Shown here piece after piece: positions 2,390-58,560 of a stretch of DNA of 64,000 bases. Position 1 is the first letter of the stretch; each line of letters starts with the position of its first letter. The DNA lies in the IMG/VR virus record IMGVR_UViG_3300029893_000001, positions 310,001-374,000 of that record; one strand, 5' to 3'. A model generated the notes under the pieces. That model was not told the DNA's origin, ran no database searches, and saw only the letters and a list, made by a program, of their open reading frames with translations. Made by a program: the position numbers and the translations under genes.

Positions 2390-2853
2390 TTCAGACTCAA
2401 GAGGTATGAGGTGAACGTATTGTTCGTGAGTGCAAAGTCTCCTCGGCGTTCCTTGATTAGCTGAATAGCTTCAGCAGCAGGAAGGCCAAACCTTTTCATC
2501 AAGATCAGGGCGGTCAGGAGCCCACTACGATTGCGTCCCGCCATACAAGTGACGAGAATCCTTTTTCCTGCCTTGTGCTCTGCCGTCAACTCGTCGGCTG
2601 CCGCATGCAGAGCACGTACAACGCTGGGTATCAACGCTGTATTGCTGTCGTCGTAGGGGATACGAATTACCCGCTTCGAGCGGTCCTCATCTGGAAGGGT
2701 CACATGCGGCTGCCATTCCCCGGCACAGAGGACAAGGATATCAAACTCCTCGAAGGCGGCACTTGAATCCAGGAGCGCTCCGCCCATCGCCAAGTTTGGC
2801 TGGATGATGTTGTAGCTGTACTTGACGGGTAAGGCGAACGTCGGAGGCTTCAT
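2386..2853 (-). CDS. dual-specificity protein phosphatase
   Basis: CX5R signature VTCMAGRNRSG, upstream IPYDD acid loop. Confidence 0.9.
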   Translation of the reverse strand: MKPPTFALPVKYSYNIIQPNLAMGGALLDSSAAFEEFDILVLCAGEWQPHVTLPDEDRSKRVIRIPYDDSNTALIPSVVRALHAAADELTAEHKAGKRILVTCMAGRNRSGLLTALILMKRFGLPAAEAIQLIKERRGDFALTNNTFTSYLLSLK

Positions 2854-3239
2854 CAGTAGCCCTCGTAAGGAACGTCTTCACGGTGGGAGGGTCCCATCCC
2901 TCGGATGTACCTAGAAACGGGACAGTGGTTTTCGCAATACGGCTCATCGTGAGGGCAAGGGTCGCCCACCCAGCGCTGACGAGCAGCGCATCGATTGTCG
3001 CATGTGAACTTTACAAGCTCTTCGACAGTCGTCTCGTTTGTGCCTCGCTCACCAAAAAGCTCGTAAACACAACACGAGCGTGGAGGCTGACGAATAATTG
3101 TCCTGAAGATGCAAAGATCGCGATACCAACAAGACGAACAAACCTCACTGACAGGTGTCGGCGAGGCTCGCACTACATCGTGTTTTCGCTCTTCGTACTT
3201 TTTTCGAAGAAGCTGAGACTTCGAAATGAAATTGGGCAT
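2853..3239 (-). CDS. Cys-rich hypothetical protein
   Basis: Multiple CxxC/CxxxC motifs; coupled stop/start. Confidence 0.55.
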   Translation of the reverse strand: MPNFISKSQLLRKKYEERKHDVVRASPTPVSEVCSSCWYRDLCIFRTIIRQPPRSCCVYELFGERGTNETTVEELVKFTCDNRCAARQRWVGDPCPHDEPYCENHCPVSRYIRGMGPSHREDVPYEGY

Positions 3240-3968: not shown

Positions 3969-5300
3969 CTATCTAATTCCCTTCATAGAATCGACCTTGG
4001 TTTTGGTCGACAGGTCAACGTCTGGGTCACCTCCATGGTGATCCGAAATTGTCATTCTGGAGAAGTCCTCCAGGAGCTGGAACTTGAAAGGAGCCCATCC
4101 TCGGACAGCAGGCTGGTCAATCGTGATAATGTGAGTGCCCTGCTCTTCCTCTCCATATTTCCAAGTCCAGACGGTGTTGGCATGTTCGGCTAGACCTCGG
4201 GCGTATCTCAAAGAGCCGTCTTCGTTCATCTGTGTGGGTGCGATAATTAAAGCCCCGAGGTCCTTCGTCAGAAGCTTCAGATCACGCGCGAGATCATTTA
4301 GCTTCTGCCAGTCCTGCATCTTGTCCCCCTGGGGATGATCCAGAAGGTTGATGTAGTCGATGACGATAACCTTGTACTTGAACGGCTTTAGCTTAATCCG
4401 GAGTTGAGAGATGCTCACATGGCTGGCAGGCCACACAGTGAATCGGCAGTTGTTTTTTAGACCGTGTGCCTTGAACCTACGCCAAGCCTTCTGCATAGCA
4501 GTAAGCTCAAGGGAACCCATGGTTTTTGTTCGGATCTTAGTGTGCTCCACACCAGAAAGATGGGAGATCAAACGTTCAGCCGTTTCTTGCTTGTTCATCT
4601 CCAGAGGGATGTATACGACGTCCACGTCATTGAGCCTGTACATGTTGCTGGTCATGTTCAGGGTCAAAATGGACTTCCCTCCTTTCTTGTGGCTCGCAGG
4701 GATGAACAAGTCGGTTGTGCCGAATCCCCCGGTAACCTTGTCGAAGTTACCAAAGGTACTTGGAAGTAGTTTGACGGGCTCGTTAGAGAAGACCTCTTCC
4801 ATTAGTTCGTCGGCCTCGTCAGGCTCTGTTCCTTTTCCGACGTGATATAGCTTCTCTTCTCCGGCCTCTGAGCGCATGTCAGAAAGACATGTCTCCATGT
4901 CGCCCATCAACTTGTCTACGTCGACTTTTCTCTCCTGCTTGAGCATTCCTAGGCTGTCCTGCCCGAAGCGATAAAACCTACGAATTACTCGGTAGTGCTC
5001 CAGCGTTTCAAACAGCCTCTTTGCGTCGTCGACCCTTTGGACAGGACTGACAGTAGGGCTCTTTAGGAGGTCTGCCGTATCTTGTTCAAGCTCGGGGTGC
5101 TCCAGGAAGGTTTCCATGGAGGGAAGGTCTAGTGCCGACTTTACGAGCATCGATTCGATAACGCGGTACGCGCCGTGCATCGGACGATACCCAAAATGGT
5201 CCGGTGACAGACTCCCTAGCAGCTCAACTTTGACTTTGTTGGGGCTCTGCAAACAAGAAAGGATAGCTTTCGTCTCTGCTTTGGGTCTTACGATCTTCAT
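3969..5300 (-). CDS. dnaB: DnaB-like replicative helicase
   Basis: FDKVTGGF, Walker A-like ASHKKGGKS, LEM, VIDYINLL, PTQMN. Confidence 0.88.
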   Translation of the reverse strand: MKIVRPKAETKAILSCLQSPNKVKVELLGSLSPDHFGYRPMHGAYRVIESMLVKSALDLPSMETFLEHPELEQDTADLLKSPTVSPVQRVDDAKRLFETLEHYRVIRRFYRFGQDSLGMLKQERKVDVDKLMGDMETCLSDMRSEAGEEKLYHVGKGTEPDEADELMEEVFSNEPVKLLPSTFGNFDKVTGGFGTTDLFIPASHKKGGKSILTLNMTSNMYRLNDVDVVYIPLEMNKQETAERLISHLSGVEHTKIRTKTMGSLELTAMQKAWRRFKAHGLKNNCRFTVWPASHVSISQLRIKLKPFKYKVIVIDYINLLDHPQGDKMQDWQKLNDLARDLKLLTKDLGALIIAPTQMNEDGSLRYARGLAEHANTVWTWKYGEEEQGTHIITIDQPAVRGWAPFKFQLLEDFSRMTISDHHGGDPDVDLSTKTKVDSMKGIR

Positions 5301-6676: not shown

Positions 6677-7146
6677 ATCCTAGGGCAAGACCACCGCTTG
6701 CAATCTTTCATGCCGGGAGGGCAGGAGCAATCGTCACTAGCCTTATCAAGGTCCTGTGCGTTCGTTAAGGGCGCGTGGTCCCGTGGATCGTTGAGGATCT
6801 CTACTCTCCAAGCTCCGGCAGAGACAGCGGCCGTTACAAATTCGAGTACGCGTTCTAGGCTGTCCGTTTTAGCGTATGAAGTCTGGACTCCGGGATTCGA
6901 GTCCGACTGCTGACGTACCGTGATTTTATACCTACGTCGTGTTGGAGGTTCATAGAAATAGTGGGTACCCATGTCTCCGCGCTCCATCACGATTTCCCCC
7001 GAGTCAGCCATTGTGTATAGGATCTTCGCGACTTTCGTAAAGGGAAAATCAGTCGTGACTTGCTCTACTTGGTAGAGGGCTACGCCTTCCTCAGAGCGGA
7101 TCACTTCTAGGATTTTTTCACGGATCTTTTCTTCATCCCGCGTCAT
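6673..7146 (-). CDS. hypothetical protein, possible N-terminal winged helix
   Basis: 157-aa coupled ORF. Confidence 0.5.
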   Translation of the reverse strand: MTRDEEKIREKILEVIRSEEGVALYQVEQVTTDFPFTKVAKILYTMADSGEIVMERGDMGTHYFYEPPTRRRYKITVRQQSDSNPGVQTSYAKTDSLERVLEFVTAAVSAGAWRVEILNDPRDHAPLTNAQDLDKASDDCSCPPGMKDCKRWSCPRM

Positions 7147-8828
7147 TCGTCGTCCTTAAATGAATCAAGCCATTCTTTCATGGTCTTAGGTCGCCGTTCC
7201 TTGGGAAGGCTCTCTGTACTTTGGGCAAAATCGAAGCCCCACTTCTTGTACAGCTTGTCCCTGAATCCCACCGCCGAGCCAGCCATGCTGTGGCTTGAGT
7301 GCCAGGTATATATGTGAACTCTTGGTTGCGGCTTCTCCCACTGTATGTTGTGGGTCTTCAGAAACTCGATGTTGGCACCAGACAAGTAACGGCGTACACG
7401 ACCTACTCGCTGCTCTTCTCTTTCCTTACCGAAGTTAGGAAAAGGCTGATGGATTGAATCGAGCGGAGGGATGTTGACGTTCTCATTGATCACTTGGGTT
7501 CCGATGATCACGCTTATGCGGCCACTTAGCAGCTCTTCTGCGTACCAGTTTTGCTCTTTCAGCTCCTGACCGCCGATCATCAACTCGCACCCGAATCCTT
7601 GCAGCTTTAGCTTCTGCTGAAGTCTAAACGCGTGATTCCTGCGCTCCGTGACTACAAGGATCTTACGTCCCTCTTCGCACTCCTTCAGGACTTCTTCGTA
7701 CAACGCCTCCTGATAATGGGCATTCCTGGCAAGGAAATTGACTAGTACAGGGAGCATGTACCTGCCCTTGAAAACCCGGTCAGGCACGTGGATGTTTGTC
7801 GGATGATAGATGACGATTGGTGTCATCTGCTCCTTTCGACCCCGTGCAGTTACTGGCCCAAGCGTGTCAAATATCGCGACGTGGGTCTGGTCTTTCCTAG
7901 ACGGAGTCGCCGTCTGGCCGCCTCGGTAATATGAGTTGAAGGCCCTTGTCGCTTGGTGGAATGTGGGCGCAGATTCATGGTGGGCTTCTTCACACCACAC
8001 CACACCAAAGTAGTTGGATAGCTTCTTACGGAGCTTTTTGCCCCTCTTCGAAGCCAAAGCCTGGAAGGTAGCAAACGTGATAGGGTAGTACTTACCTGGC
8101 CGGCTGACGAACTTACGGACAGGATTCCCCTCCTTATCTGTGCCCCACTTCCAGTCCTTGTTGAGAATTCCCACCAAATGCTCGCCGTGCTGCTCTTCCA
8201 GCTCGGCTATGTTTGTGTGTTCATAGAGTCCTTCAAATCCGACCATCAAATGTCGGACTTCCTGCGCCAAAAGAAGAACGCGAAAGCCCATCTTCGCAAC
8301 CAGCCAAGCCCATACTACAGTCTTTCCCCAGCCGGTGGGGGCCTGGATGATTCCGTATCCCTTCTTGAGCCAAACATTAGCGACTTCTTGCTGTTCTGGG
8401 TAGAGCTTACGATGACACTTTAGCTTGAATCCTAATTTGGGGGCGACGCGCTGATCGTCGATCCCAAGGTGGCCGAACACACGGTTAATCTTGCCCATGT
8501 TTCCACGAGCAAACGTTGTCCAGCCATCTTCTCGCCTTGCGTAAGTACGGAGAACGATTTCCTTCGTTACAGGAAGCTTTTTGTGAGTGAAGTGCTTGCA
8601 AACGTCATCGAGTGTATACCCCTTTGACTCACAAGTGACTCGACCTGGGCGCCACTTCTTTCCCCAGAGATCACAATTCGCGCATTGGGTAGGGAGATCA
8701 ACCATCGGTTGGTACTCCACCTCTTCAAAGCGATATGTGAACTCTTCTTCAGCTTCCGGCTCTACGTATTCTGACGGAACCCAGAGTACGTTGTTCAGGA
8801 CGCAAAGAGCATCGTCCTCGTTCGACAT
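7143..8828 (-). CDS. superfamily 2 helicase (UvsW/XPB-like)
   Basis: APTGWGKT, CEEAHH (DEAH variant), TATP, QRVGRVRR. Confidence 0.9.
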   Translation of the reverse strand: MSNEDDALCVLNNVLWVPSEYVEPEAEEEFTYRFEEVEYQPMVDLPTQCANCDLWGKKWRPGRVTCESKGYTLDDVCKHFTHKKLPVTKEIVLRTYARREDGWTTFARGNMGKINRVFGHLGIDDQRVAPKLGFKLKCHRKLYPEQQEVANVWLKKGYGIIQAPTGWGKTVVWAWLVAKMGFRVLLLAQEVRHLMVGFEGLYEHTNIAELEEQHGEHLVGILNKDWKWGTDKEGNPVRKFVSRPGKYYPITFATFQALASKRGKKLRKKLSNYFGVVWCEEAHHESAPTFHQATRAFNSYYRGGQTATPSRKDQTHVAIFDTLGPVTARGRKEQMTPIVIYHPTNIHVPDRVFKGRYMLPVLVNFLARNAHYQEALYEEVLKECEEGRKILVVTERRNHAFRLQQKLKLQGFGCELMIGGQELKEQNWYAEELLSGRISVIIGTQVINENVNIPPLDSIHQPFPNFGKEREEQRVGRVRRYLSGANIEFLKTHNIQWEKPQPRVHIYTWHSSHSMAGSAVGFRDKLYKKWGFDFAQSTESLPKERRPKTMKEWLDSFKDDE

Positions 8829-9656: not shown

Positions 9657-10526
9657 TCAGGCGCACATCAGCTTGATCATAGGCTGCAGAGACGAACACT
9701 CGAATTCGTTGATGAACTTCCGCAGCGCCCTCTCGTCTCCGGCTCTCTCGCGACGCTGAATCCTTACATCAGGTCGAAGCTGGACAACGCTGTACATCTT
9801 CCTGATGTGCTCCTCGTACTCGCGGAGCTTGTCTGCTGTCTTCTGAGGAACGGCGTCTAGCATCGCAAACAACTCGTCAGGGTCGGACGCTTGCTCCAAA
9901 ACCTCGCTGACGTGCTTTTTGAGCAAGCGAGGAACTCCAGGAAGTCCGTCGCTCTTATCGCCAAAGAGAGCTTTAGCTAACGTGATCGATTTTGGGGCCG
10001 CAACACCGTAGTGTTTGGCGCAGGATTTTTGGATATCCTGCTCAGAAAGCATTTCCTGGAATGAAACGATTTGGACGTTAGGGCCCCTAATCGTCCATAA
10101 ATCCTTGTCTGACGACAATACTAGGTGTAGCGCGTTCGGCTTCCTCTTCACGAACGCAGCAATAGCGTCATCTGCTTCTGCCTCAACGGGTCGTAGTTCT
10201 GTACAGCGGATGAGACTAAGCAGGCGTTTCACGTCCGGCGCAGGGTTGAATTCATGGTCTCGTTTTCTACCGGCTTTGTAGTCGGGAAACACCTCGTATC
10301 GCTGACGTTCCCCTCCTTCATAGCAGAAGACTAAGTGGCCCTGGAAGTCGCGCTTCCATTTGTAGATCGTACGGAAGAACCTAAAAACGTGTCCTGTAGG
10401 ATATCCGTCAGACCTACATAAATCAACCCCACCCTTTCCAGGCTTTGCCATCCACGACTTCCACAGAGTGTTTTGGAAGTCGACGACTACGTACCTCTCT
10501 TGGTGTTCAAGAATCCTTCTCAACAT
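9657..10526 (-). CDS. 5'-3' exonuclease / flap endonuclease (PolI N-terminal, T4 RNase H-like)
   Basis: YKAGR, EADDAIA, SSDKDL, GDKSDGLPGV. Confidence 0.93.
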   Translation of the reverse strand: MLRRILEHQERYVVVDFQNTLWKSWMAKPGKGGVDLCRSDGYPTGHVFRFFRTIYKWKRDFQGHLVFCYEGGERQRYEVFPDYKAGRKRDHEFNPAPDVKRLLSLIRCTELRPVEAEADDAIAAFVKRKPNALHLVLSSDKDLWTIRGPNVQIVSFQEMLSEQDIQKSCAKHYGVAAPKSITLAKALFGDKSDGLPGVPRLLKKHVSEVLEQASDPDELFAMLDAVPQKTADKLREYEEHIRKMYSVVQLRPDVRIQRRERAGDERALRKFINEFECSSLQPMIKLMCA

Positions 10527-25665: not shown

Positions 25666-26313
25666 TTAGCCGCGGAGATTCGGTAGCCCATTGATCTGGT
25701 GTAAGCTGATTACATCTGAAGACAAGAATTGAATCTCCTTATCCCAGATCCAACGTACTTCCTTAATCTCGTCGTAGTTCATAAGGATGTCGGAAGCATA
25801 AGAGTGGACCACCGTGAGAATGCCATCTCCGATGAATCCAGGTATGTTCCATCCACGATCGGCTGCAGCCTCGATAGGATCCCACCCATAAGAGTCACAT
25901 GTGCTGGAGGACAGGTGGGACAAAACGTCTACAGACATGTACTTGCGGTCTTCGGGGTCCTCAGGGAATAGTCGACTATTGCGTTCTCTGGTAGACTCTC
26001 CGCATTCAGGACAAAAGCGTGCCTCGGACTTGACTGCTTTTTGGCAACATGGCGGAAGTATAGCTGCTTCGGAGTCAAGAGAAAATCCCTTGTGGTACTT
26101 CACAACCGCCAAATAGGCGGCTCTTAATGAAGCAAACGAGACTTCCCACGCCTCCCAAGGCGTTGGCGCATCCGGAAATTCTACGCGCATCCCATTGTCG
26201 TTGCGCAAACTCATAACGACAGGGCTTGTCGAATTGCTCTCGACATACCCATCGTAGAACATGAAGATGTTGTACTTTGCGGGATTCAACGGTAGGTCAT
26301 GAACTGATTCCAT
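25666..26313 (-). CDS. hypothetical zinc-ribbon-containing protein
   Basis: CCQK...FCPECG. Confidence 0.55.
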   Translation of the reverse strand: MESVHDLPLNPAKYNIFMFYDGYVESNSTSPVVMSLRNDNGMRVEFPDAPTPWEAWEVSFASLRAAYLAVVKYHKGFSLDSEAAILPPCCQKAVKSEARFCPECGESTRERNSRLFPEDPEDRKYMSVDVLSHLSSSTCDSYGWDPIEAAADRGWNIPGFIGDGILTVVHSYASDILMNYDEIKEVRWIWDKEIQFLSSDVISLHQINGLPNLRG

Positions 26314-26836
26314 GACGCAAACTCCTTTCGTTCCACGCTCGAACTAGAATCGGCGTGGGATCGAGCAATTCTTCCGGCTGCGGATTTCCCTTTTTCCACC
26401 AAACAGTACTGCGAGTACCTGGAATGTACAGTTCCAGGTGAAGCATGAATCGTGAGTGTCCCGGTATATCCGAACGCTCTTGGCCTGGCTTCAAAACAGG
26501 AACTACGTTTGCGATTTCCTGACCTACGCAAACCAAGTCTCCTGCGGATACCTTCGGAGTCACTTCTCCATAGGCGATGACACCGCTTGGCCCCTCGACA
26601 AGAATGACGTCAGTAGGAAGCCACCAAGGAGACTCAGGAGGTCCTGTGAATTGCTCAATGCACACTACCCTACCGGTTTCCATCGCTAGGACCGGTGCGT
26701 TCTCGCGCGTATAGATGTCCACTCCAGTGTGAACGTCGTGTTTCCTGACGGCCCCGAACTTCCCTTCTTTTGAAAGGAGTCTAGGGAACTCAGTCCACTC
26801 GTAAGGGAGAGGAAAACAAATCTCGGTCATTCGCAT
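26297..26836 (-). CDS. M23 family metallopeptidase
   Basis: FGAVRKHDVHTGVD (HxxxD) and MLHLE. Confidence 0.85.
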   Translation of the reverse strand: MRMTEICFPLPYEWTEFPRLLSKEGKFGAVRKHDVHTGVDIYTRENAPVLAMETGRVVCIEQFTGPPESPWWLPTDVILVEGPSGVIAYGEVTPKVSAGDLVCVGQEIANVVPVLKPGQERSDIPGHSRFMLHLELYIPGTRSTVWWKKGNPQPEELLDPTPILVRAWNERSLRHGISS

Positions 26837-28019
26837 ATGATTCTCGGAATGCATCGAACGCGGCTACAGCCGGGCCCAGGAATTCTTCCTTAAGGCACAA
26901 CTCATCACAGAGCATGATGTTCCGATACCCAATATCGTACAACCATGCCAGCTCAGAGAAATCGGAGCACGCAGGCACTGGAGACCTGACTATCGACAGC
27001 AGCAGCCTCGACGCCACACAGGCTTCTGGGTCGTGCGCCAGAATCATCTTCTGTGCTGTCAGGATTTCATGGGGTCTATCCAATTCAACGTACAAATCTC
27101 CGCGAGCGGTGACTAGAGTCAAGTTGTCTCTCTTCTTGAATTCTCTGGATACGTATTCGAGTCCCTTCTTAGACTCGATCTTCAGCATCACCTCAGCATC
27201 GCGTCCGACCAGCTCAAGAAATTCGTCTACGTCGCGCTGCGATTCGACATAAGACAGGAACCACTTCGTGAATCCAGCCTTCTTCACGCGAGCGATCTTC
27301 TCAAGCTCCGAAGGAACAAATTGGTCTCCGCCAACTACGAGGCTTGGGTGGCGGATGTGAATCGATTCGCCCTCTCTCACCATGTACTTGGGACCGCCCC
27401 TAAAGACCAGCCGGTATCCGTCATCAACGACACGCTCTAGCAGGGCAGTGTCGGCTCCCGCCTTAAACAAGACAGGAGTAGGGGTGGTCACCGAAATGGG
27501 GTGGTTGAGACGAATCTCCAAGTGGGATGTCTCTGGAAGAACCTCTACAATTCGTAGCTGTCGGCCCTTGATGTCGTAGAAGAGCGGAACGGTTCCTTCG
27601 TGGCGTTCGGCCTCTACAATTTTCAGCTCCTTATCCAACTCTGGCAGTGCCATCATGGCACTATTGAGCCGAATGCCAGAAAGCCTGGGGTCGTTTAGGA
27701 AGGGGCGGAAGTGGGGGAAGCTGGGCCAGAGAGTGACCAGAAGCTTGAGATCAGTGTCCATCGATTTGGCTTCTGCCCGAATTGCAAGGGAAGCTTCCTT
27801 GGAGATTCGGTGCAGACGCACCCGAAGAAACCATAGAGTCGCAACGTAAGCGATTCCTGCCAAGACCAGAGCTAGACTCCCCGCTCCCACGGCTCGCATC
27901 CATGCCTCTGGACCGGCAAAGATGATAATGAGACACGCGGTAAGAAGAATCAGGGGTACAATGATCTGACCAGCCCTGACATACCAAGGCATGTGGAAGG
28001 TCACTTGAGAAGTTTTCAT
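26790..28019 (-). CDS. pyruvate-kinase-like barrel protein with N-terminal TM segments
   Basis: LVTLWP, IRLNSA, YDIKGRQLR, LSYVES, MLKIESKKGL, ARGDL, SELAWL, IMLCDE; lacks the PK C-terminal domain. Confidence 0.75.
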   Translation of the reverse strand: MKTSQVTFHMPWYVRAGQIIVPLILLTACLIIIFAGPEAWMRAVGAGSLALVLAGIAYVATLWFLRVRLHRISKEASLAIRAEAKSMDTDLKLLVTLWPSFPHFRPFLNDPRLSGIRLNSAMMALPELDKELKIVEAERHEGTVPLFYDIKGRQLRIVEVLPETSHLEIRLNHPISVTTPTPVLFKAGADTALLERVVDDGYRLVFRGGPKYMVREGESIHIRHPSLVVGGDQFVPSELEKIARVKKAGFTKWFLSYVESQRDVDEFLELVGRDAEVMLKIESKKGLEYVSREFKKRDNLTLVTARGDLYVELDRPHEILTAQKMILAHDPEACVASRLLLSIVRSPVPACSDFSELAWLYDIGYRNIMLCDELCLKEEFLGPAVAAFDAFRESYANDRDLFSSPLRVD

Positions 28020-28990
28020 GCTAGAGGCTTCGTCTTCGTTCCGGTGCCAGGTCGATGCAAGGTGCTGGCGCCTTTGGCGAGAGCCTTGGTGGGCGGTGCT
28101 GCAGCATGGACTGTCTCAAGAGACTTCATCACCGTAGCTACCTGCGCAGGCGTCTGCCGGTCATTCAACTCCTTCTTGAAGTAGTCGATCTTGCCGGTCT
28201 CTCTCGCGAAAATGCCAAAGATCACGTCTACGACGCGACCAGCTTCAGGGAGGAAGACGACACGATCTTCGCCTACCAAGCTTGCCCAAACTCGATGTTG
28301 ATGGCTGTTGGTCGGGTCCGACTCTCCACCTCCCTGGTAAGGCTTGCGGATATAGTACACAGAGTATTTCTCAGCCAACTCCGTGAAGACATCCTTTGTC
28401 GTGGCCATCTTCGGTGCAGCGGTGTGGGCATACCGCTCCGAGACGTCAGGAGAAATGGTGTCGTACGGCAACTCGTCTCCAATCATGATGAAGATTGGCT
28501 TACGAACCGCCATAGGCATCTCGACGTTTCGAGCGAAGTAAAGGGCCGCCAGTTCGTAGCTCTCCCTCCCTCCGCCTCCGCCGCCTCCTTCAATTACGAG
28601 GCTAGTTAGCCTAGCCTTCATGTCCTCACCGTTGGCGAATTCTCCGGCCTGCATCGGATACTTGTCTGAAAACGCATCTCCGACAGCAGCGAAGCAGACT
28701 TCAGCCCCATCTCCGAAGTACTCCTTCCTCATCTCATGATCGAGGTAAGGGAGCTTCGAGAAAATAGTCGCAGGCCATTCACCCATGGACCCAGTGACAT
28801 CACAGACGATCACAATGGGCGCTGGGCTACTCGTCTTGATCGACCTTGGAAGCATGTCGATCGACGTCTTCCCTGCAGACGTGGCGGTCGCATAGCTTCG
28901 TCCGGCATAGGCGTCGTACGCCGCACGAGCGGACGCAAAGCTGTCGCCGCTAGACCATGTTGCCGGAGTGTAGTCATCACCTTCAGCCAT
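28016..28990 (-). CDS. VWA-domain protein
   Basis: MIDAS DVTGSMG, AVGDA, GGGG..ESY, IGDE; start MAEGDD after AGGAG. Confidence 0.85.
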   Translation of the reverse strand: MAEGDDYTPATWSSGDSFASARAAYDAYAGRSYATATSAGKTSIDMLPRSIKTSSPAPIVIVCDVTGSMGEWPATIFSKLPYLDHEMRKEYFGDGAEVCFAAVGDAFSDKYPMQAGEFANGEDMKARLTSLVIEGGGGGGGRESYELAALYFARNVEMPMAVRKPIFIMIGDELPYDTISPDVSERYAHTAAPKMATTKDVFTELAEKYSVYYIRKPYQGGGESDPTNSHQHRVWASLVGEDRVVFLPEAGRVVDVIFGIFARETGKIDYFKKELNDRQTPAQVATVMKSLETVHAAAPPTKALAKGASTLHRPGTGTKTKPLA

Positions 28991-29221
28991 TTTGCTTCTC
29001 CTTGGTGGTCTTCTTGGTCCACTCAAAAATGAGATTGACTCCCCTACTGAGGTATACCGCCTCTCCCTCGTCAAACCCCGGAGGGATCACTACGTAGGCT
29101 CGTAGTTCTGATTCCTTTGGAATCGAGACTCCACGTTCCGAGAGAAGTTGAGCAATCTGCTCGGTTGATAGCGACACCTTACCCTTTTCGGTTTCGGTAG
29201 TCTCGATTTGGACGCTCAGTT

Positions 29222-30250
29222 TCATGCCGTGAAACCCGGAATTGGCTTGAGGTTTGATTGATGACGGCCGAACGAATCGACCCTCATTTGATGAAACGTC
29301 TCGATCAGATTCTCTTTCGACCAGTTTGGTCGAGAGAGGGGGTCTCTTACAATCAAACGCTTCACGAACTTGCACATGGGATCTGGAGTCGACGCTGGAA
29401 CCTTGAGAGCTGACACCCCGTCGTAACTACCGGTGAGACAATACAACATGGTCTTACCCAGGCTGTACAAGTCTGTCTCCGGAATTGGAGGCTTCCCGTC
29501 CACCATCTCCGGGGCCGAAAATAATTCGGTGTATCCCTTGGCTGCCGTCTTCCCGGTAGGACGAATGGCTGCCAGTCCGAAATCGACCAACACGGCGAGA
29601 TGCTTGTGTGGCTGCACGATGACGTTCTTCGGCTTCAAATCTCCGTGCACGACGCCGTGTTGGTGAAGGTATAACAGTCCGTTCAAGAGACGCTGGGTGA
29701 TCCATGCCACATTCTCTGGGTCCAAGCGTCCAGCCTTGTCAACGACCTCCTCCAGCGTTGGACCCTCAACATAGGACATGACGAGGATGATGCTCCCATC
29801 ATCATGGCGAATGACATCCCTCATGGCAGGCAGTGCGTAGTGCCTCATGTCCCAAAGCGCACGAGCCTCGTCCATGAGGATAGCCTCTGATTCTGGGCCT
29901 GTCATGAAGCCCTGCTTAAGGCAGGCCGGATGCTTGAGGATGAGGTGCTCAGCTTTGTATGTAGCGCCAAAGCCGCCCTCTGCGATCTTCTCGACAACAC
30001 GATAGTTGCCAATAATCGTGCCTTTCTTCGCGAGCTTCTCGAAGCGGGCGCGCTTTTGGGCGCTTACAAGGATACTGTGAGCCTCATTGATTTCCTTGGC
30101 CATGGTGTCGTCACCCCCTGACCGATCAGGATGGTACTTCACCAGCAAGGCCTTCTTGGCAGCGTCAAGAACTTCTCGCGACGCATTCACGGAGACCTGA
30201 AGGATGTCGGCCAACTCACGGAGAGTCTCCGCCTTTTCAACCAAACCCAT
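29222..30250 (-). CDS. J-domain fused Hanks-type Ser/Thr protein kinase
   Basis: KYHPDR (J domain), EGGFGATY, HGDLKPKN, DFG, APE, DLYSLG. Confidence 0.92.
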   Translation of the reverse strand: MGLVEKAETLRELADILQVSVNASREVLDAAKKALLVKYHPDRSGGDDTMAKEINEAHSILVSAQKRARFEKLAKKGTIIGNYRVVEKIAEGGFGATYKAEHLILKHPACLKQGFMTGPESEAILMDEARALWDMRHYALPAMRDVIRHDDGSIILVMSYVEGPTLEEVVDKAGRLDPENVAWITQRLLNGLLYLHQHGVVHGDLKPKNVIVQPHKHLAVLVDFGLAAIRPTGKTAAKGYTELFSAPEMVDGKPPIPETDLYSLGKTMLYCLTGSYDGVSALKVPASTPDPMCKFVKRLIVRDPLSRPNWSKENLIETFHQMRVDSFGRHQSNLKPIPGFTA

Positions 30251-31603: not shown

Positions 31604-32260
31604 CTACTTTCTAGGTCCCGTGCGTTCGTCATGAATTACGACAGAGCGCTCTGGCACCAAAGTTAAGATCTCGTCTGAGACGTTACGTCGGGCCTGCTGC
31701 TCGTACTTGTCTCGAAAATGTTGAGACAGGTAAATCTGATCTCGTGCAAGAAGACCAAGAAGAATACGACGCCTCCCTTCACGGAAGGTATTTTCGTCTA
31801 GAAAAGCGTACTCTCTTCGAATCTTCTGTGTGTAATCTAGGTATTCCGCCTCAGAACGTCCTAGGATCGCTAGATCGATGTCGAGGAAGTAGGAGAACAG
31901 ATGAGTATGTTCCCACGTATAATCAGGAATTTGATGATCGGATGTCGACATGATCATGTCGTACACAAGGTGAATGGGGACACTCTCTACGCCACCAGGA
32001 TAAAGAAGATCCGCGCTATTACACTCGTTGACACCCGGAGGGGCTTGTGGGTCATAGACCGCGTCGTGGAACCAAATCGCAGCCTCCAACACGGAGGCCT
32101 CATCGTCAGAGACGAAAGGACGCACATCATGCAGCTCTCGAAGACAGTGCATGATATGGTCAAGATTGTGGTAATGACGATGGGGCTCGGTGTAGAGCGT
32201 TACCAGGTGGGCTCGTTGCGCAAGCGTAAGCATCCTATGCTGTTTACACAGCGTGCTCAC
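31604..32260 (-). CDS. HD-domain metal-dependent phosphohydrolase
   Basis: RHYHNLDHI, WFHDAVYDP, NECNSA, DIDLAILG, IRREY. Confidence 0.88.
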   Translation of the reverse strand: MSTLCKQHRMLTLAQRAHLVTLYTEPHRHYHNLDHIMHCLRELHDVRPFVSDDEASVLEAAIWFHDAVYDPQAPPGVNECNSADLLYPGGVESVPIHLVYDMIMSTSDHQIPDYTWEHTHLFSYFLDIDLAILGRSEAEYLDYTQKIRREYAFLDENTFREGRRRILLGLLARDQIYLSQHFRDKYEQQARRNVSDEILTLVPERSVVIHDERTGPRK

Positions 32261-49946: not shown

Positions 49947-50204
49947 TCAGTGGCAGGACACCCAGAATCCGGGCCGGACCATGACGGCCCGATTGACCCG
50001 GCGGGTGACGTGCGCCCCGTACCGATTGCACGCGGCCTGCGTTTCGGCGAGGAGCGCATCCCCGCTCGACGCTTCCGAGCGGGGCGTCGAGGAATACTCG
50101 ACGCGGGCCGGCGTCGTCGCGCCGCAGCCCGAGGCGAGCAGCACGATGCAGACGAGCAGGAGCGAGAAGAGGCCAGCGCCGAGAGCCTTGATTTCGTCCA
50201 TCAT
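49947..50204 (-). CDS. small putative lipoprotein
   Basis: Hydrophobic signal ending LLASGC; promoter motif at 50228 and GGAGG. Confidence 0.65.
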   Translation of the reverse strand: MMDEIKALGAGLFSLLLVCIVLLASGCGATTPARVEYSSTPRSEASSGDALLAETQAACNRYGAHVTRRVNRAVMVRPGFWVSCH

Positions 50205-50309
50205 TATTCGGTCCTCCCTTGTGCCGACTAGTATCGGGTGGGTTCGCTCCTCTTAAATGGAGAAGCCCCCGGGCATCCGCCCGGGGGCTATTCCCTTGTT
50301 GCCCGGAAA

Positions 50310-50786
50310 TCAGCCGGGCAACAAATCGTTCAGCTCGTCGAGGAAATCGTCGACCTCCCCGTCCGAAGCCTCCGCGGGATCCGGGGTCGGCTCGGGAGCC
50401 GGAGCGGGGGCCGGCGCCGCCTTCGGAGTCGCCTTCGGTGCGGCCGGAGGCGCCACCGGAGCCGCTCCGCCGAGGCTCGACAGATCCAGATCGTCGATCC
50501 CCAGGGACAGCGCCGGAGCGCTGGCCGGCGGAGGGGTGGGCGCAGCCTTCGGAGCCTCGGGAGCCTTCGCGGCGCCCTTGCCCTTGCCCTTCGGACAGCC
50601 CCGGGCGTTGTGCCCCTGCTCGCCGCAGGTGCCGCAGGTGTAGGTCGGGGCCGGAGCCGCCATCACCGCCGCCGTGGCCAGCGTCGAGATGGGAACGACC
50701 GCGAAGCCCATCGCGCTCAGCGCCCGCACCACCTTGCCGAACTGCTCGTCGGTCATCTTGTCGGTCATCTTCTTGCTCATGATCAT
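50310..50786 (-). CDS. CCHC zinc-knuckle protein with Pro/Ala linker and acidic tail
   Basis: CGTCGEQGHNARGC; tail DGEVDDFLDELNDLLPG; promoter motif at 50823. Confidence 0.75.
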   Translation of the reverse strand: MIMSKKMTDKMTDEQFGKVVRALSAMGFAVVPISTLATAAVMAAPAPTYTCGTCGEQGHNARGCPKGKGKGAAKAPEAPKAAPTPPPASAPALSLGIDDLDLSSLGGAAPVAPPAAPKATPKAAPAPAPAPEPTPDPAEASDGEVDDFLDELNDLLPG

Positions 50787-50850
50787 GATTCCTTTCCGGC
50801 GAGGCGTCCCTCGCCTCATTTCCTAGTATCGAATGGGTTCGTTTGGCCGA

Positions 50851-50943
50851 CTAGCGCCGCTGACGCTCCGCGTGACGCCGCGCCAACTCGGCGCGGGCCT
50901 CCTCGATCGCTAGAATCTCGTCCACGTCCAAACCGTCGTACAT
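50851..50943 (-). CDS. 30-aa peptide MYDGLDVDEILAIEEARAELARRHAERQRR
   Basis: Promoter motif at 50968 and GGAGG upstream; below the ORF-track cutoff. Confidence 0.6.
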   Translation of the reverse strand: MYDGLDVDEILAIEEARAELARRHAERQRR

Positions 50944-51050
50944 GGGGCAAAAACCTCCGTTCGCCGTCTAATATCGGCCGGGTTCGCCCAATTGACATTT
51001 CGAGAGTAGCTTAAACGGGCTTTGGCCCGGGTTTCCCCGGGCCGCCCGCC

Positions 51051-51467
51051 TCACGCCGCCTTCGTACGGGCGGCCAGCTTGGCGGCGACCGCCTTGCTGT
51101 ACGCCGCCGCCTTCTCGTAGACCGCCGCCGCCAGGTGCAGATCGAGCCGGCCGATGCTCGACCCGAGGCACACGTGGCCCTCGGAGGGCACCCCGAGCAC
51201 CAGCTTGTTCCCCTGGCCGCAGATCCACCGCTGGAGACGCTGCCGGTTGCCGCTCGACGCCTTGGCCACGAAGACGTCGTGGACCGCGATGCGCGCCGGG
51301 CCCGGCGTCCCGTCCTCGCCGTGCATCGAGCGGAGCACGATGCCGAAGGACTTCACGCCCTCCCCGGCGGAGCCGACCTGCGCGCCGGTCGCGGCGTCCA
51401 GGTGGAAGACCAGGGCGGGGGCCAGCGGGAGATCGCGGGTGACGTCGTACGTGTTCTTCTTCGCCAT
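51051..51467 (-). CDS. hypothetical cassette protein
   Basis: Promoter motif at 51513, hairpin-TTTAA at 51011-51043. Confidence 0.7.
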   Translation of the reverse strand: MAKKNTYDVTRDLPLAPALVFHLDAATGAQVGSAGEGVKSFGIVLRSMHGEDGTPGPARIAVHDVFVAKASSGNRQRLQRWICGQGNKLVLGVPSEGHVCLGSSIGRLDLHLAAAVYEKAAAYSKAVAAKLAARTKAA

Positions 51468-51538
51468 GATTCACCATTCTTTCTGGGGCGCCGTGCCCCG
51501 TCGTTGTACCGACTAGTATTGTCAGGGTTCGGAAAACT

Positions 51539-51672
51539 TGGCGGAGTCACATCGATGCATGGGTGGAGCCCGTGTCTCTGTGCAAGTGACTCGCTCCCGA
51601 CGAGTATGTCCCTACGTGCAGCTTGCCGGTAACGTAGAGGGAGACCGCCGGGCGGCTATCATTCCTCCGCCA
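51539..51672 (-). ncRNA. candidate structured ncRNA (~135 nt)
   Basis: Directly downstream of the promoter motif at 51677; ends pair (TGGCGGAG/CTCCGCCA); nested stems; no credible ORF. Confidence 0.45.
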
Positions 51673-51743
51673 TTCACTACTATCAGCCGGGTTCAAATCC
51701 CTCTTAAACGCGAGAAGGCCCGGGGCTTTTGCCCCGGGCCCCA

Positions 51744-51941
51744 TCACCCGACCTTCCGAATCGGGGCGACGATGACTCGACTACGCAGCTCGCGCCGCTC
51801 TCGGAGCTTGCGGATCTGCAAATCGAGAAGCGCAATCGTGGCATCGAGCATTTCCCTTTCCTCGGGATCTTGCTCCCTCACACGCTTGCGCAGCGCCTCC
51901 GCTTTCTCACAGAGGAGTGCACGAATGACATGATCGTTCAT
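51744..51941 (-). CDS. hypothetical cassette protein
   Basis: Promoter motif at 51959, GGAGG, hairpin-TTTAA at 51704. Confidence 0.7.
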   Translation of the reverse strand: MNDHVIRALLCEKAEALRKRVREQDPEEREMLDATIALLDLQIRKLRERRELRSRVIVAPIRKVG

Positions 51942-52247
51942 TATTCACCTCCCACCAACTACTATCGAGCGGGTTCAATTGCTATTCGGGAGTAGGGTCA
52001 CGCGGAAATAGGAAAATGCCGACCAATTAATTTTGACCCATAAGTGGTAAAGTATGTAACCGCTCGTTCACACATTCTCACGCTTAAGTACGTATACGCT
52101 CGCAGCCATTGCGAGCTTGCTTGTACCCACTGCGAAATAGCCTAATAAGGCATGTACGCTCGCAGCCATTGCGAGCGGGGCGGGGCGTTAAAAGGCTACG
52201 GGCCCCAGAGGGGCCCTATCTCCTCGCAGCCGTTGCGAGAAATGGTC

Positions 52248-52478
52248 CTAGTAGTCCATCCGTCCGCTCGGAATGGGACCCGAGCCGAGCAGGTAGGCCA
52301 GCGCCTCGACCCACGCCGCTCGTCCAGCGGCCAAGTGAGACCTCAGGACGAAAATGCTTCCCAACGCTCCGACTTGCAGATCGAGAGCAAGTCGAGCCTG
52401 GTGCTCGTGGTAGCGTGCCGAGCCGACCGCTAGAGCAGCACGAGCACACTGATCACCGAAATCTTTCTCCGTGGCCAT
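52248..52478 (-). CDS. hypothetical cassette protein
   Basis: Promoter motif at 52496, GAGGAGG. Confidence 0.65.
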   Translation of the reverse strand: MATEKDFGDQCARAALAVGSARYHEHQARLALDLQVGALGSIFVLRSHLAAGRAAWVEALAYLLGSGPIPSGRMDY

Positions 52479-52569
52479 CGTTGCCTCCTCGCCGATTATT
52501 ATCAGCTGGGTTCAATTCGTGCGCGGTTAAATGCGTAACGGCTGCGAGGAATCTCGCAGCCGCTGCAAA

Positions 52570-52729
52570 CTCCCAAAGGGAAACTGGAATCCGTACTCAA
52601 TCACTTGTCCGACTTCGTTGTCGGGGTGTCTTTCGGGACCACACGATTCCCGCTTCTACGCCGAAGCTCCACGAAAGATCGTATGTTTCCAGCGTCCCTT
52701 TGGGAGCCCGATTTTTCGGTGAATCGGGC
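52570..52729 (-). ncRNA. candidate structured ncRNA (~160 nt)
   Basis: 12-bp plus 6-bp closing stem (52570-52589 / 52687-52706) with internal hairpins, preceded by hairpin 52706-52729. Confidence 0.5.
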
Positions 52730-52756
52730 GAACCGTTCTCGCAGCCGTTGCGAGAA

Positions 52757-53095
52757 TCAGGCGGCCGTGCCGAGCACCTTGCCCATCGACAGGAACCGGC
52801 CCTTCTCCCCGCGGAGCCTCAGGCGCAGATCCCCGCTCTCGTGGGCGTCCCGGATCTTGTCGCCGAGGCTCACCCGCACCCCCGCCTGCTTGCCCTGCTT
52901 CCTCAGGAACTCGCGGGCCTCCTCCGCCTCCTGCTGCTGCGCCTGCTGCCGCTCCTTGAACTGGCGGCGGGACTTGGCCTCGCGCTCCTTCGCCTTGCGC
53001 TCCTCGGAATCCTGCCAGAAGCGGCGCTTCACCTCCGCCGGGTCGAGGCGGCGGGTTCCGGGGACGAGCGTGGTGCGGGTCGCGTTCGTGGTCAT
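52757..53095 (-). CDS. hypothetical cassette protein (charged coiled coil)
   Basis: Promoter motif at 53131, AGGAGG. Confidence 0.7.
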   Translation of the reverse strand: MTTNATRTTLVPGTRRLDPAEVKRRFWQDSEERKAKEREAKSRRQFKERQQAQQQEAEEAREFLRKQGKQAGVRVSLGDKIRDAHESGDLRLRLRGEKGRFLSMGKVLGTAA

Positions 53096-53220
53096 GATTA
53101 TTCCTCCTGGGCCGGAGCCCGTTGCCCCGACTAGTATCGGCCGGGTTCGGCCGACTAGGGAATTAAACGCGCAACGGCTGCGAGATTTCTCGCAGCCGTT
53201 GCTTGTGTAGAGTCAGTGGG

Positions 53221-53403
53221 TCAGGGGATGCTGACCTTCGCCTCGACCGTCGCGGAGTCGAGATCGATGGCCTCGCGGCACGAATCCACGTCCACGATGT
53301 CATCGTTACCCACGAGCACATCCCACACGAGAGATTCCGCCTGCTGGGGACTCTCGGCCGTGACTTTCACCGTCACGGTCACAGTGAACTCCTGATCTTC
53401 CAT
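53221..53403 (-). CDS. small acidic cassette protein
   Basis: Promoter motif at 53423; cassette flanked by 19-bp direct repeats. Confidence 0.7.
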   Translation of the reverse strand: MEDQEFTVTVTVKVTAESPQQAESLVWDVLVGNDDIVDVDSCREAIDLDSATVEAKVSIP

Positions 53404-53451
53404 TTTGCATTTCCCTCGCTAACTATTATCCGCAGGGTTGCTTGTGTAGAG

Positions 53452-53730
53452 TCAGCCCAGGTCGAAGGGGTACTCCGAAGTGACGTCGCCCCACAGACGA
53501 TCGTCGTCGCCGTAGTAGTGGTGCGTGGCCGTCTCCGGGATCACCGGATTCTCCCGGTCGTCGTTCCTGTAGACACAGAAGCGCTCCCCCGGGCAGCAGT
53601 CGCCCAGGAAAAGCATTCCCGCTCCCATCAGGACGATCGTCTCGGCCGGCGTTCCCTGCGGGGCCACGAAATGCACCACGGTGACGTCGCGGTCGCTTTC
53701 GTAGCGCACGGAGTAGTCGTTGACGTTCAT
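53452..53730 (-). CDS. hypothetical cassette protein
   Basis: Promoter motif at 53751, GAGGAGG. Confidence 0.7.
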   Translation of the reverse strand: MNVNDYSVRYESDRDVTVVHFVAPQGTPAETIVLMGAGMLFLGDCCPGERFCVYRNDDRENPVIPETATHHYYGDDDRLWGDVTSEYPFDLG

Positions 53731-53850
53731 TCGGCTTTCCTCCTCAGCGACTATTATCGTCGGGGTTCACGTCCGACACGAAAAGCGCGTTAAATGAAAC
53801 AACGGCTGCGAGAAATCTCGCAGCCGTTGCGTGCCTTGGGAACTTTGGAA

Positions 53851-54195: not shown

Positions 54196-54290
54196 GGGTC
54201 GTCTCCTCGCTGACTATTATCAACAGGGTTCTCGCAGCCGTTGCGAGAAATTAAAGTAAGATGGCCCCGGGTTTCCCCGAGGCCCTCTTT

Positions 54291-54915: not shown

Positions 54916-54958
54916 CACCATTTAGTATCGCCAGGGTTCTCGCAGCGGCTGCGAATCC

Positions 54959-58555: not shown

Positions 58556-58560
58556 GTCCC

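What the first reader, a model, noticed from the sequence alone, without database searches (positions are those of the whole stretch)
26297..30250. J-domain kinase / VWA / membrane pyruvate-kinase-like / M23 cluster
Seen: coupled genes for a DnaJ(HPD)-Ser/Thr kinase fusion, a small ORF, a MIDAS VWA protein, a PK-like barrel and an M23 peptidase. Known: VWA plus Hanks kinase modules occur in ter-type stress/conflict systems, and J domains recruit DnaK. Inference: a phage signalling module coupling phosphorylation to the host Hsp70, possibly reversed by the dual-specificity phosphatase at 2386-2853.
Basis: partly seen in the sequence, partly recalled or inferred. Interest (0 to 1): 0.6.

Follow-up and report, generated by a model that had tools for sequence, protein, structure and literature searches.

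The report
Kinase, vWA and pyruvate-kinase-like cassette
A 392-kb subsurface phage carries a tightly conserved three-gene cassette (a chaperone-recruiting protein kinase, a metal-site adaptor protein and a shortened pyruvate-kinase-like enzyme) that also occurs in ultra-small CPR bacteria and DPANN archaea; I found no description of it in the papers I could search, and the neighbouring peptidase and small genes are not part of it.

Summary
They are not one five-gene system.

The conserved unit has three genes:
- a J-domain (HPD) fused to a non-RD Hanks Ser/Thr kinase;
- a divergent vWA protein with a MIDAS metal site (phrog_2971, no Pfam match);
- a pyruvate-kinase paralogue with A and B domains but no C domain.

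This order holds in every relative examined. In 60 GTDB loci the vWA gene is followed by the PK-like gene in 60 and preceded by the kinase in 55. It also holds in 15 of 15 close IMG/VR loci. The carriers are CPR bacteria, DPANN archaea and huge phages, but the cassette is rare (3 of 401 and 14 of 301 sampled genomes).

More distant members of the vWA family sit beside a kinase and an adenylosuccinate-synthetase-like gene in many large phages. One locus has an AAA+ ATPase in place of the kinase.

In archaeal carriers, J-domain presence tracks Hsp70 presence (17 of 18 against 0 of 3).

The M23 gene, the small ORFs, the TM extension on the PK-like gene and the distant phosphatase are lineage-specific.

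Working model (inferred): a PK-like phosphotransferase regulated by a vWA adaptor, a kinase and host DnaK. The function has not been tested.

The parts
29222..30250 (-). J-domain plus Hanks-type Ser/Thr kinase, 342 aa. The J domain is nt 30041-30208 (HPD at residues 40-42). The kinase domain is about nt 29429-30004. Catalytic residues are K112, E128, H202-G-D204 (non-RD), N209, D223-F-G and APE at 246-248. A conserved C-terminal tail follows.
   Evidence: Pfam and PHROG hits. Residues checked and conserved across the family. 847 database clusters at E <= 1e-30; all 120 listed carry DnaJ plus Pkinase.
28983..29225 (-). Small ORF of 80 aa inserted between the kinase and vWA genes. It is specific to this lineage and not part of the conserved cassette.
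   Evidence: ATGA overlap with the kinase stop and an 8-nt overlap with the vWA start. No family hit. Cellular cassettes have no ORF here. The ORFs at this position in L002 and L155 are unrelated in sequence.
28016..28990 (-). Divergent vWA protein, 324 aa, with MIDAS residues D64-x-T66-x-S68 and D172-E173 and a conserved EGGGGG...ES[YE] loop. The disordered basic C-tail carries an invariant Ser309.
   Evidence: phrog_2971. AlphaFold model and fold search. Family alignments. 938 database clusters.
26790..27761 (-). Core of the pyruvate-kinase paralogue (residues 87-409), with A and B domains and no C domain. Counterparts of the PK catalytic residues are R117, N119, S120, D149, K151, R156, K280, E282 and D308. 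Family-specific changes are S337-R338 (PK has T-Q) and C371-D372-E373 (PK has S-G-E).
   Evidence: Pfam and NCBIfam. PDB sequence alignments. Model and fold search. Invariant columns. Residues checked. All homologues start at the position of M87.
27762..28019 (-). In-frame extension of 86 codons with two hydrophobic helices, fused to the PK-like gene only in this genome.
   Evidence: Sequence. Relatives carry unrelated separate small ORFs here or nothing. No hit in 65 loci. Identical in three assemblies.
26297..26854 (-). Divergent M23-like peptidase. The probable start is the ATG at 26830. It is a neighbour and not part of the cassette. HxxxD is kept (H42, D46). HxH is replaced by M137-x-H139.
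   Evidence: Pfam below cut-off. Homologues in jumbo phages CM1, XacN1 and PA5oct, and 26 kb from the cassette in LR745208. Alignment. Absent near the cassette in 65 loci.

Best explanation
The region holds a self-contained, horizontally mobile three-gene cassette in a fixed order: J-domain Hanks kinase, then MIDAS vWA protein, then a pyruvate-kinase paralogue without a C domain. In this phage lineage, unrelated small ORFs have been inserted into it and an unrelated M23-like gene follows it.

Shown:
- The three genes are co-conserved in this order in CPR bacteria, DPANN archaea and huge phages.
- The catalytic residues of the kinase and the PK-like enzyme, and the MIDAS residues of the vWA protein, are conserved across the family.
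- The cassette is one flavour of a wider family. In that family this vWA sits next to a kinase, or in one locus an AAA+ ATPase. It also sits next to a nucleotide-handling enzyme, either PK-like or adenylosuccinate-synthetase-like.

Inferred mechanism:
- The PK-like enzyme is the output. It would be a PEP-dependent phosphotransferase to ADP or other NDPs that supports the adenine or NTP supply during infection.
- The vWA protein is its adaptor or regulatory subunit, binding through the MIDAS site.
- The kinase sets the state of that complex by phosphorylation. The invariant Ser309 in the vWA tail is a candidate site.
- The J domain recruits the host's DnaK/Hsp70 to remodel or activate the complex. 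This role is analogous to the AAA+ partner in MoxR-vWA activases such as CbbQO or NorQD.
- In this phage, the TM extension may tether part of the enzyme to the membrane.
For: - Gene order. vWA is followed by PK-like in 60 of 60 GTDB loci and preceded by the kinase in 55 of 60. No fourth gene is conserved. All 15 IMG/VR loci with at least 40% vWA identity and an intact vWA gene show kinase-vWA-PK. The same order holds in L002, L003, L155 and L156.
- Cellular context. The cassette lies in chromosome-scale contigs beside RuvA, IleRS and similar genes and in the closed AR15 chromosome.
- Coupling. Start and stop codons overlap.
- Active sites. Kinase motifs, PK residues and MIDAS residues are conserved.
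- Folds. PK A+B fold at TM 0.71-0.77. vWA fold with a NorD vWA domain among the hits.
- Paralogue, not the glycolytic PK. A canonical 486-aa PK coexists with it in one genome.
- Wider theme. 54 of 80 viral loci have vWA followed by an AdSS-like gene, 32 of them with a kinase. L117 and L072 have vWA, PK-like and AdSS-like together. L072 has an AAA+ ATPase upstream. L073 has an NMNAT-like gene and an NAD kinase flanking the triad.
- J domain and Hsp70. The phage has no Hsp70. Archaeal carriers with a J-like domain have Hsp70 in 17 of 18 genomes. Those without have it in 0 of 3. Fisher p = 0.003.
Against: - No biochemical or expression data exist. No RNA run holds the region.
- The three-chain complex prediction gave no verdict, so binding between the proteins is not supported by modelling.
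- The PK-like active site differs from PK at three conserved positions (T-Q to S-R, S-G to C-D), so the substrate may not be PEP/ADP.
- The cassette is rare and patchy (3 of 401 Patescibacteria, 14 of 301 DPANN genomes). That distribution fits an accessory or conflict element as well as a metabolic one.
- 22 of 80 viral vWA-AdSS loci have no kinase detectable with my models, so the kinase is not obligatory for the family.
- The Hsp70 correlation rests on only two independent J-less lineages and on incomplete MAGs.
- About a quarter of J-like domains lack an exact HPD.
Confidence: 0.45

Rival explanations
1. The cassette is a conflict module, acting in defence, superinfection exclusion or counter-defence. 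The kinase and vWA sense an infection or immune cue. The PK-like or AdSS-like enzyme then changes adenine-nucleotide pools, either depleting them to abort infection or restoring them against nucleotide-depleting host immunity.
For: - The distribution is rare, patchy and horizontally mobile across bacteria, archaea and phages.
- The genomic neighbourhood varies.
- In phages, hypervariable small ORFs are inserted between the genes.
- The best PADLOC hits of the kinase are defence kinases mad6 and PD-T4-6.
- Distant cassettes are flanked by NADAR, NAD kinase and NMNAT-like genes.
Against: - The PADLOC hits are generic Hanks-kinase similarity. The vWA and PK-like proteins match no defence model.
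- Sequence conservation is high, 45-65% between domains of life.
- The gene order is rigid, which is unlike fast-evolving immune systems.
- No nuclease, TIR, Sir2 or pore effector is present.
- No defence-island context was seen in the loci read.
Confidence: 0.25
2. A five-gene phage signalling module of ter type (vWA plus Hanks kinase) couples phosphorylation to host Hsp70. It includes the small ORF and M23, and is reversed by the dual-specificity phosphatase at 2386-2853.
For: - The J domain with HPD is fused to a kinase predicted to be active.
- The Hsp70 co-occurrence holds.
- The DSPc domain at 2386-2853 is real.
- The five genes overlap or abut.
Against: - M23, the small ORF and the TM extension are not conserved with the triad.
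- No DSPc match was found in LR745208 or in 2 of 3 cellular carriers tested.
- No PP2C is linked. The phage's only PP2C lies beside a different kinase about 275 kb away.
- The cassette is cellular as well as viral.
Confidence: 0.1
3. It is an ordinary auxiliary metabolic gene. The PK-like protein is simply the glycolytic pyruvate kinase of small-genome organisms, carried by the phage to boost fermentative ATP. The kinase and vWA genes are adjacent by chance.
For: - The PK fold and catalytic residues are present.
- Some carrier genomes showed no canonical PK: G001 and G005 had only weak PK-like matches, and G003 had no Pfam PK match at all.
- Sources name the protein 'pyruvate kinase'.
Against: - It coexists with a canonical 486-aa PK in G002 and with a second PK in G004.
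- It is present in under 1% and about 5% of sampled CPR and DPANN genomes.
- It scores far below the NCBIfam PK equivalog cut-off (38.5 against 306 bits).
- Its linkage to the vWA gene holds in 60 of 60 loci, which is not chance.
Confidence: 0.1

Closest known systems
TerY-P triad and vWA/kinase/PP2C(/FHA) operons, for example E. coli YegI-YegK-YegL (recalled from the literature) and Deinococcus DRA0331-0334 (bioRxiv 10.64898/2026.01.23.701218, abstract seen)
   Same: An intracellular MIDAS vWA protein is encoded next to a Hanks-type Ser/Thr kinase in one operon.
   Different: No PP2C or FHA partner is linked. The vWA is a separate family that Pfam VWA models do not detect. The kinase carries a J domain. 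The invariant third gene is a PK-like enzyme.
MoxR-vWA chaperone/activase pairs (CbbQ-CbbO, NorQ-NorD; PDB 9qh6 and 9qhd were fold hits)
   Same: A vWA adaptor is paired with an ATP-driven remodelling machine and a target enzyme. The NorD vWA domain is among the structural matches. One paralogous cassette (L072) has an AAA+ ATPase in the kinase's position.
   Different: Here the ATPase would be recruited in trans (host Hsp70 through the J domain) and a kinase is added. The L072 ATPase is a classical AAA (PF00004), not MoxR. No remodelling has been shown.
Canonical pyruvate kinase (PykF, PKM, yeast Pyk1)
   Same: It has the A-domain TIM barrel with the inserted B domain. Counterparts of R, N, S, D, K, R, K, E and D in the K+/Mg2+/PEP/ADP site are conserved.
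   Different: It has no C (allosteric and tetramerisation) domain. T-Q is changed to S-R and S-G-E to C-D-E, giving a CxxxC pair. It scores far below the equivalog cut-off. It is always operonic with the vWA gene, and here it carries a 2-TM N-terminal extension.
Phage J-domain proteins such as Rki of phage RB43 (recalled from the literature, not tested here)
   Same: A phage-encoded J domain with HPD, in a phage that has no Hsp70 of its own, implies use of the host DnaK.
   Different: Here the J domain is fused to a protein kinase. It belongs to a cassette shared with cellular genomes.
Kinase - vWA (phrog_2971) - adenylosuccinate-synthetase-like cassette of cluster C mycobacteriophages (I3 gp270-273), 190-kb Vibrio phages and many IMG/VR contigs
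   Same: It has the same vWA family (26-36% identity, all MIDAS and EGGGGG motifs kept) and the same layout, with the kinase upstream and the enzyme downstream.
   Different: The enzyme is AdSS-like instead of PK-like. The kinase is a different subfamily with no J domain detected. Its genes are annotated as hypothetical proteins or generic enzymes in the phage records read.

Membership tests
Hanks-type (eukaryote-like) Ser/Thr protein kinase | Gly-rich loop, VAIK Lys, alpha-C Glu, HRD/catalytic Asp with Asn, DFG and APE | tested here: met
   GGFGA 92-96, K112, E128, HGD204LKPKN209 (non-RD), D223FG, APE 246-248. Pfam Pkinase scores 107 bits against a 31.7 cut-off. The motifs are conserved in the family.
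J-domain (DnaJ/Hsp40) co-chaperone | About 70-residue helical domain with an HPD tripeptide | tested here: met
   Pfam DnaJ scores 35.8 bits against a 27.8 cut-off on residues 15-70, with HPD at 40-42. A J-like domain is present in 48 of 52 family kinases, and 34 of those have an exact HPD.
J-domain (DnaJ/Hsp40) co-chaperone | Stimulates the ATPase of a partner Hsp70 | not testable with these tools
   Only indirect evidence is available. The phage has no Hsp70. J-domain presence tracks Hsp70 presence in archaeal carriers, 17 of 18 against 0 of 3.
vWA domain with MIDAS | Rossmann-like vWA fold | tested here: met
   The model has pLDDT 85.6. Foldseek probability is 1.00 to integrin beta I-like, NorD and ITIH vWA domains.
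vWA domain with MIDAS | DxSxS motif plus downstream Thr/Asp metal ligands | tested here: met
   D64-V-T66-G-S68 and D172 are invariant. The usual Thr ligand could not be assigned; the invariant E143 may replace it. This assignment is inferred.
vWA domain with MIDAS | Match to a curated Pfam VWA model | tested here: not met
   The best hit is VWA_CoxE at E = 0.083 and 12.7 bits against a 26.4 cut-off. A profile search of PDB sequences found nothing.
Pyruvate kinase | Barrel (A) domain with inserted B domain and catalytic Lys, Glu and Asp | tested here: met
   PF00224 scores 35.2 bits against a 30 cut-off. TM is 0.71-0.77 to PKs. K280, E282, D308, R117, N119, S120, D149 and R156 are invariant in the family.
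Pyruvate kinase | C-terminal alpha/beta domain and equivalog-level similarity | tested here: not met
   The protein ends after the barrel. TIGR01064 scores 38.5 bits against a 306 cut-off. A canonical PK coexists with it in G002.
Pyruvate kinase | PEP + ADP to pyruvate + ATP activity | not testable with these tools
The active-site changes (S337-R338, C371-D372) leave the substrate open.
TerY-P triad / ter-type system | PP2C phosphatase linked to the vWA and kinase genes | tested here: not met
   No fourth gene is conserved in 65 cellular and phage loci or in 80 viral loci. The phage's only PP2C is at genome position 64 kb, beside another kinase. I did not search for Ter genes.
MoxR-vWA chaperone pair | MoxR-class AAA+ ATPase encoded beside the vWA gene | tested here: not met
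   None is present in the window or in the triad loci. One paralogous locus (L072) has a PF00004 AAA protein upstream.
M23 (LytM) metallopeptidase | HxxxD and HxH zinc and catalytic motifs | tested here: inconclusive
   HxxxD is present (H42, D46). The second motif is M137-x-H139 in this protein and in its XacN1, PA5oct and L155 homologues. Pfam scores 26.6 bits against a 28.7 cut-off.
Known anti-phage defence system (PADLOC) | All components match the models of one system | tested here: not met
   Only generic kinase models hit (mad6, PD-T4-6). The vWA protein has no hit, and the PK-like protein has only a chance-level Cas11a match (E = 0.017).

The most novel reading that the evidence does not exclude
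The phrog_2971-type vWA protein defines an unrecognised class of chaperone-linked enzyme-control cassettes spread across large phages, CPR bacteria and DPANN archaea. In this class a Ser/Thr kinase, together with Hsp70 (recruited through a fused J domain) or an AAA+ ATPase, switches a dedicated nucleotide enzyme on or off. The enzyme is either a minimal pyruvate kinase or an adenylosuccinate-synthetase paralogue. Phages would use these cassettes to rebuild or protect the adenine-nucleotide pool during infection, for example against nucleotide-depleting immunity.
Probability: 0.15. Interest if true: 0.85.

Novelty: new variant of a known kind. Interest (0 to 1): 0.6.

Why it matters
- If the model holds, this would be an example of a J-domain/Hsp70 machine wired through a kinase and a vWA adaptor to a specific metabolic enzyme. 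It would parallel the MoxR-vWA activases.
- It would give a function to a vWA family (phrog_2971) whose members are annotated as hypothetical in the phage records I read, including the cultivable cluster C mycobacteriophages and about 190-kb Vibrio phages. Those phages could be used to test it genetically.
- It documents gene flow between huge subsurface phages and CPR/DPANN cells. It also describes a C-domain-less pyruvate-kinase paralogue of unknown substrate with more than 1,300 database clusters.
- For annotation, the 'pyruvate kinase' label on these roughly 310-aa proteins in CPR and DPANN metabolic reconstructions is probably misleading.

Tried and rejected
- **Complex prediction.** It was re-run with allowed proteins only (A4, A2, A1). 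The result was no verdict (score 0.11, mark 0.32). It counts neither for nor against binding.
- **Profile search of PDB sequences with the vWA alignment.** No hits.
- **Literature.** Six searches found no description of the cassette. The Kaur et al. 2020 conflict-systems paper has no such system in the passages I searched.
- **Expression.** No RNA run holds the region. Laying contigs only confirmed the sequence.
- **Promoter and terminator scan.** Nothing above the shuffled expectation.
- **M23 against PDB sequences.** No meaningful hit.
- **Housekeeping glycolytic PK.** Rejected because of coexistence with a canonical PK and because the cassette is rare.
- **Small ORFs or TM segment as conserved parts.** Rejected, because the equivalents in the closest relatives are unrelated in sequence.
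- **PhoU/AbrB-like gene near the cassette in 11 archaeal loci.** Treated as probable shared synteny and not pursued.
- **High-GC end of the window (50-64 kb) as host DNA.** A Pfam scan gave nothing host-like.
- **Large representative-protein search.** Not used, because the word search and family scans were sufficient.

Full report
**Setting.** The window is bases 310,001-374,000 of a 392,328-bp IMG/VR virus record. Public runs place this phage in subsurface and rock metagenomes. Most genes in the window are on the minus strand, and the finding covers five consecutive minus-strand ORFs.

**Observation.** All five ORFs are real.
- The 342-aa product of 29222-30250 has a DnaJ domain above Pfam's cut-off, with HPD at residues 40-42. 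It also has a Pkinase domain at E = 1e-30.
- The kinase motifs are K112, E128, HGD204, N209, DFG223 and APE. It is a non-RD kinase, and HGDxKPxN is nearly universal among its relatives.
- The kinase stop overlaps the ATG of an 80-aa ORF (ATGA). That ORF's end overlaps the ATG of the next gene by 8 nt.
- The next gene, 28016-28990, matches no Pfam VWA model. It belongs to phrog_2971, a family of unknown function.
- A confident model of that protein (pLDDT 85.6) matches integrin beta I-like and NorD vWA domains. D64-x-T66-x-S68 and D172 are invariant.
- Its stop overlaps the ATG of the 409-aa PK-like gene.
- Residues 87-409 of the PK-like protein model at pLDDT 92.7. They superpose on pyruvate kinases over the A and B domains at TM 0.71-0.77.
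- Counterparts of the PK catalytic and cation-site residues are invariant across 45 homologues. Three family-specific changes stand out: T-Q to S-R, S-G to C-D, and a CxxxC pair. The protein has no C domain.
- The last ORF is a divergent M23-like protein. It keeps HxxxD but has MxH in place of HxH, like its jumbo-phage homologues.

**What belongs together.** Three of the five genes travel together.
- The closest IMG/VR relative (L002, 78-81% identity) and the 485-kb huge phage LR745208 (L003, 42-48%) keep kinase, vWA and PK-like in order. Neither has M23, the small ORF or the flanking genes beside them.
- The three proteins have 847, 938 and 1,349 database clusters respectively, many on shared contigs.
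- The same triad lies in a 1.24-Mb Patescibacteria contig between FemAB/RuvA and housekeeping genes. It also lies in a 607-kb contig and in Nanoarchaeia contigs.
- In 60 GTDB species-representative loci, the vWA gene is followed by PK-like in 60 of 60. These loci are mostly CPR and DPANN and include the closed chromosome of archaeon AR15. The vWA gene is preceded by the kinase in 55 of 60, the exceptions being mostly contig ends.
- None of the 65 loci examined has M23, the small ORF, the TM segment or the other window neighbours. Clustering all ORFs found no fourth conserved gene.
- In the nearest relative (L155, 88% kinase identity) M23 is still downstream. The small ORFs between the triad genes are unrelated in sequence, and the PK-like gene is a separate 309-aa ORF.
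- The phage lineage therefore has variable insertion slots between the conserved genes. The 2-TM extension fused to the PK-like gene is unique to this genome, although it is reproduced in three assemblies.

**Distribution and origin.**
- The vWA marker was found in 3 of 401 sampled Patescibacteria genomes and 14 of 301 genomes of the AR15 phylum. The cassette is a rare accessory element.
- A vWA+PK tree puts the DPANN copies in one supported clade nested among CPR copies.
- The window+L002 phage pair branches inside the CPR grade. LR745208 branches elsewhere. This suggests more than one transfer into phages, but the tree is unrooted and weakly resolved.
- The PK-like gene is a paralogue, not the glycolytic enzyme. 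One carrier also has a canonical 486-aa PK, and some carriers have a second, divergent triad.

**A wider family.**
- Distant vWA homologues (26-36% identity, all motifs kept) occur in about 200 cluster C mycobacteriophage records and in about 190-kb Vibrio phages.
- There the vWA gene sits after a kinase and before an adenylosuccinate-synthetase homologue.
- A scan of IMG/VR found at least 411 loci. Of the best 80, 15 are kinase-vWA-PK, and these have the 15 highest vWA identities apart from one locus with a split vWA gene and no PK-like gene.
- Another 54 are vWA-AdSS, 32 of them with a kinase. One is vWA-PK-AdSS.
- A second locus in a Falkowbacteria genome reads AAA+ ATPase, vWA, PK-like, AdSS-like. 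A second AR15 locus reads NMNAT-like, kinase, vWA, PK-like, NAD kinase.
- The recurring logic is this vWA, plus a kinase or an ATPase, plus a nucleotide-handling enzyme.

**J domain.**
- The phage has no Hsp70.
- A family-specific model finds a J-like domain in 48 of 52 full-length kinases, 34 with an exact HPD.
- Among archaeal carriers, 17 of 18 genomes whose kinase has the domain contain Hsp70. All three whose kinase lacks it showed none. Fisher p = 0.003.
- The three J-less genomes represent only two lineages, and MAGs are incomplete. Even so, this supports a working link to the cell's Hsp70.

**Mechanism (inferred).** The enzyme is the output, and the vWA protein is its MIDAS-based adaptor or regulatory subunit. 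The kinase controls that pair by phosphorylation. The J domain brings in host DnaK to remodel it, as AAA+ partners do for vWA adaptors in CbbQO and NorQD. Given the AdSS and NAD-enzyme associations, the output most likely concerns adenine or NTP supply. The complex prediction gave no verdict, and no expression data exist.

**Rivals.**
- A conflict or counter-defence role fits the patchy, mobile distribution. It lacks any known effector or defence-model match.
- A plain glycolytic auxiliary gene fails on paralogy and rarity.

**Comparison and novelty.** The nearest described systems are vWA-kinase-PP2C triads and MoxR-vWA activases. This cassette shares the vWA-plus-regulator logic. It differs in three ways: it lacks PP2C and MoxR, it has a J-kinase fusion, and its invariant partner is an enzyme. 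Six literature searches found no description of it. I rate it a new variant of a known kind, with moderate to high interest because it is widespread, strongly conserved and testable in cultivable phages.

Noticed in passing
window 28983-29225 and 27762-28019; L002:9020-9256 and 10214-10516; L155:1655-1894 and 2869-3078; L156:6761-6991 and 7980-8618: In the phage lineage the two junctions between the triad genes are filled with small ORFs that are unrelated in sequence, even between relatives at 80-88% identity. Cellular cassettes have nothing at these positions. The junctions behave like hypervariable insertion slots.
   Followed up: partly
window 50000-64000: G+C rises from about 0.52 to 0.58-0.66 for the last 14 kb of the window. 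The stretch has many overlapping ORFs on both strands and tRNA-Met (55491-55565) and tRNA-Glu (59860-59932). A Pfam scan of ten ORFs gave only DUF3228 and a weak L7/L12 C-terminal match, so the origin is unexplained.
   Followed up: partly
window 2386-2853 (minus strand): There is a real dual-specificity phosphatase domain (DSPc, E = 6e-14). It lies among replication genes (DnaB-like helicase at 3969-5300, SF2 helicase at 7143-8828). It is not linked to the cassette in other genomes.
   Followed up: partly
genome G000:C1 61510-62001 and 64089-64427 (outside the window): A second, weak kinase-like gene (584-aa frame) lies about 2 kb from the phage's only PP2C phosphatase. This is a separate kinase/phosphatase pair.
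   Followed up: no
genome G000:C1 132275-132991 and 112821-113921 (outside the window): The phage has a second J-domain protein (DnaJ 57.9 bits, 238 aa) and a second, very distant vWA-like protein (366 aa, 36 bits to the family profile). My local models found no kinase, PK-like, AdSS-like or AAA partner anywhere else in the genome.
   Followed up: partly
window 31604-32260 (minus strand): A phosphohydrolase of phrog_19425 (E = 5e-31) lies about 1.4 kb upstream of the cassette. It has no Pfam hit and is not conserved with the triad.
   Followed up: partly
L013:2496-3437 and 10 other archaeal loci: An AbrB/MazE-like plus PhoU-domain gene lies within about 2 kb of the triad in 11 DPANN-type loci. 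This could be shared synteny or a link to phosphate signalling.
   Followed up: partly
L009-L011 (Nanoarchaeia contigs): Here the J-less triad sits directly downstream of AAA, JAB and ThiF (E1-like) genes and upstream of a CYTH-domain gene.
   Followed up: no
window 26297-26854; LR745208 159165-159668; XacN1 ORF423; PA5oct EST35_0441: A small cytoplasmic M23-like protein with MxH in place of HxH is shared by jumbo phages of Xanthomonas, Stenotrophomonas and Pseudomonas and by this phage. This hints at relatedness to that jumbo-phage group.
   Followed up: partly
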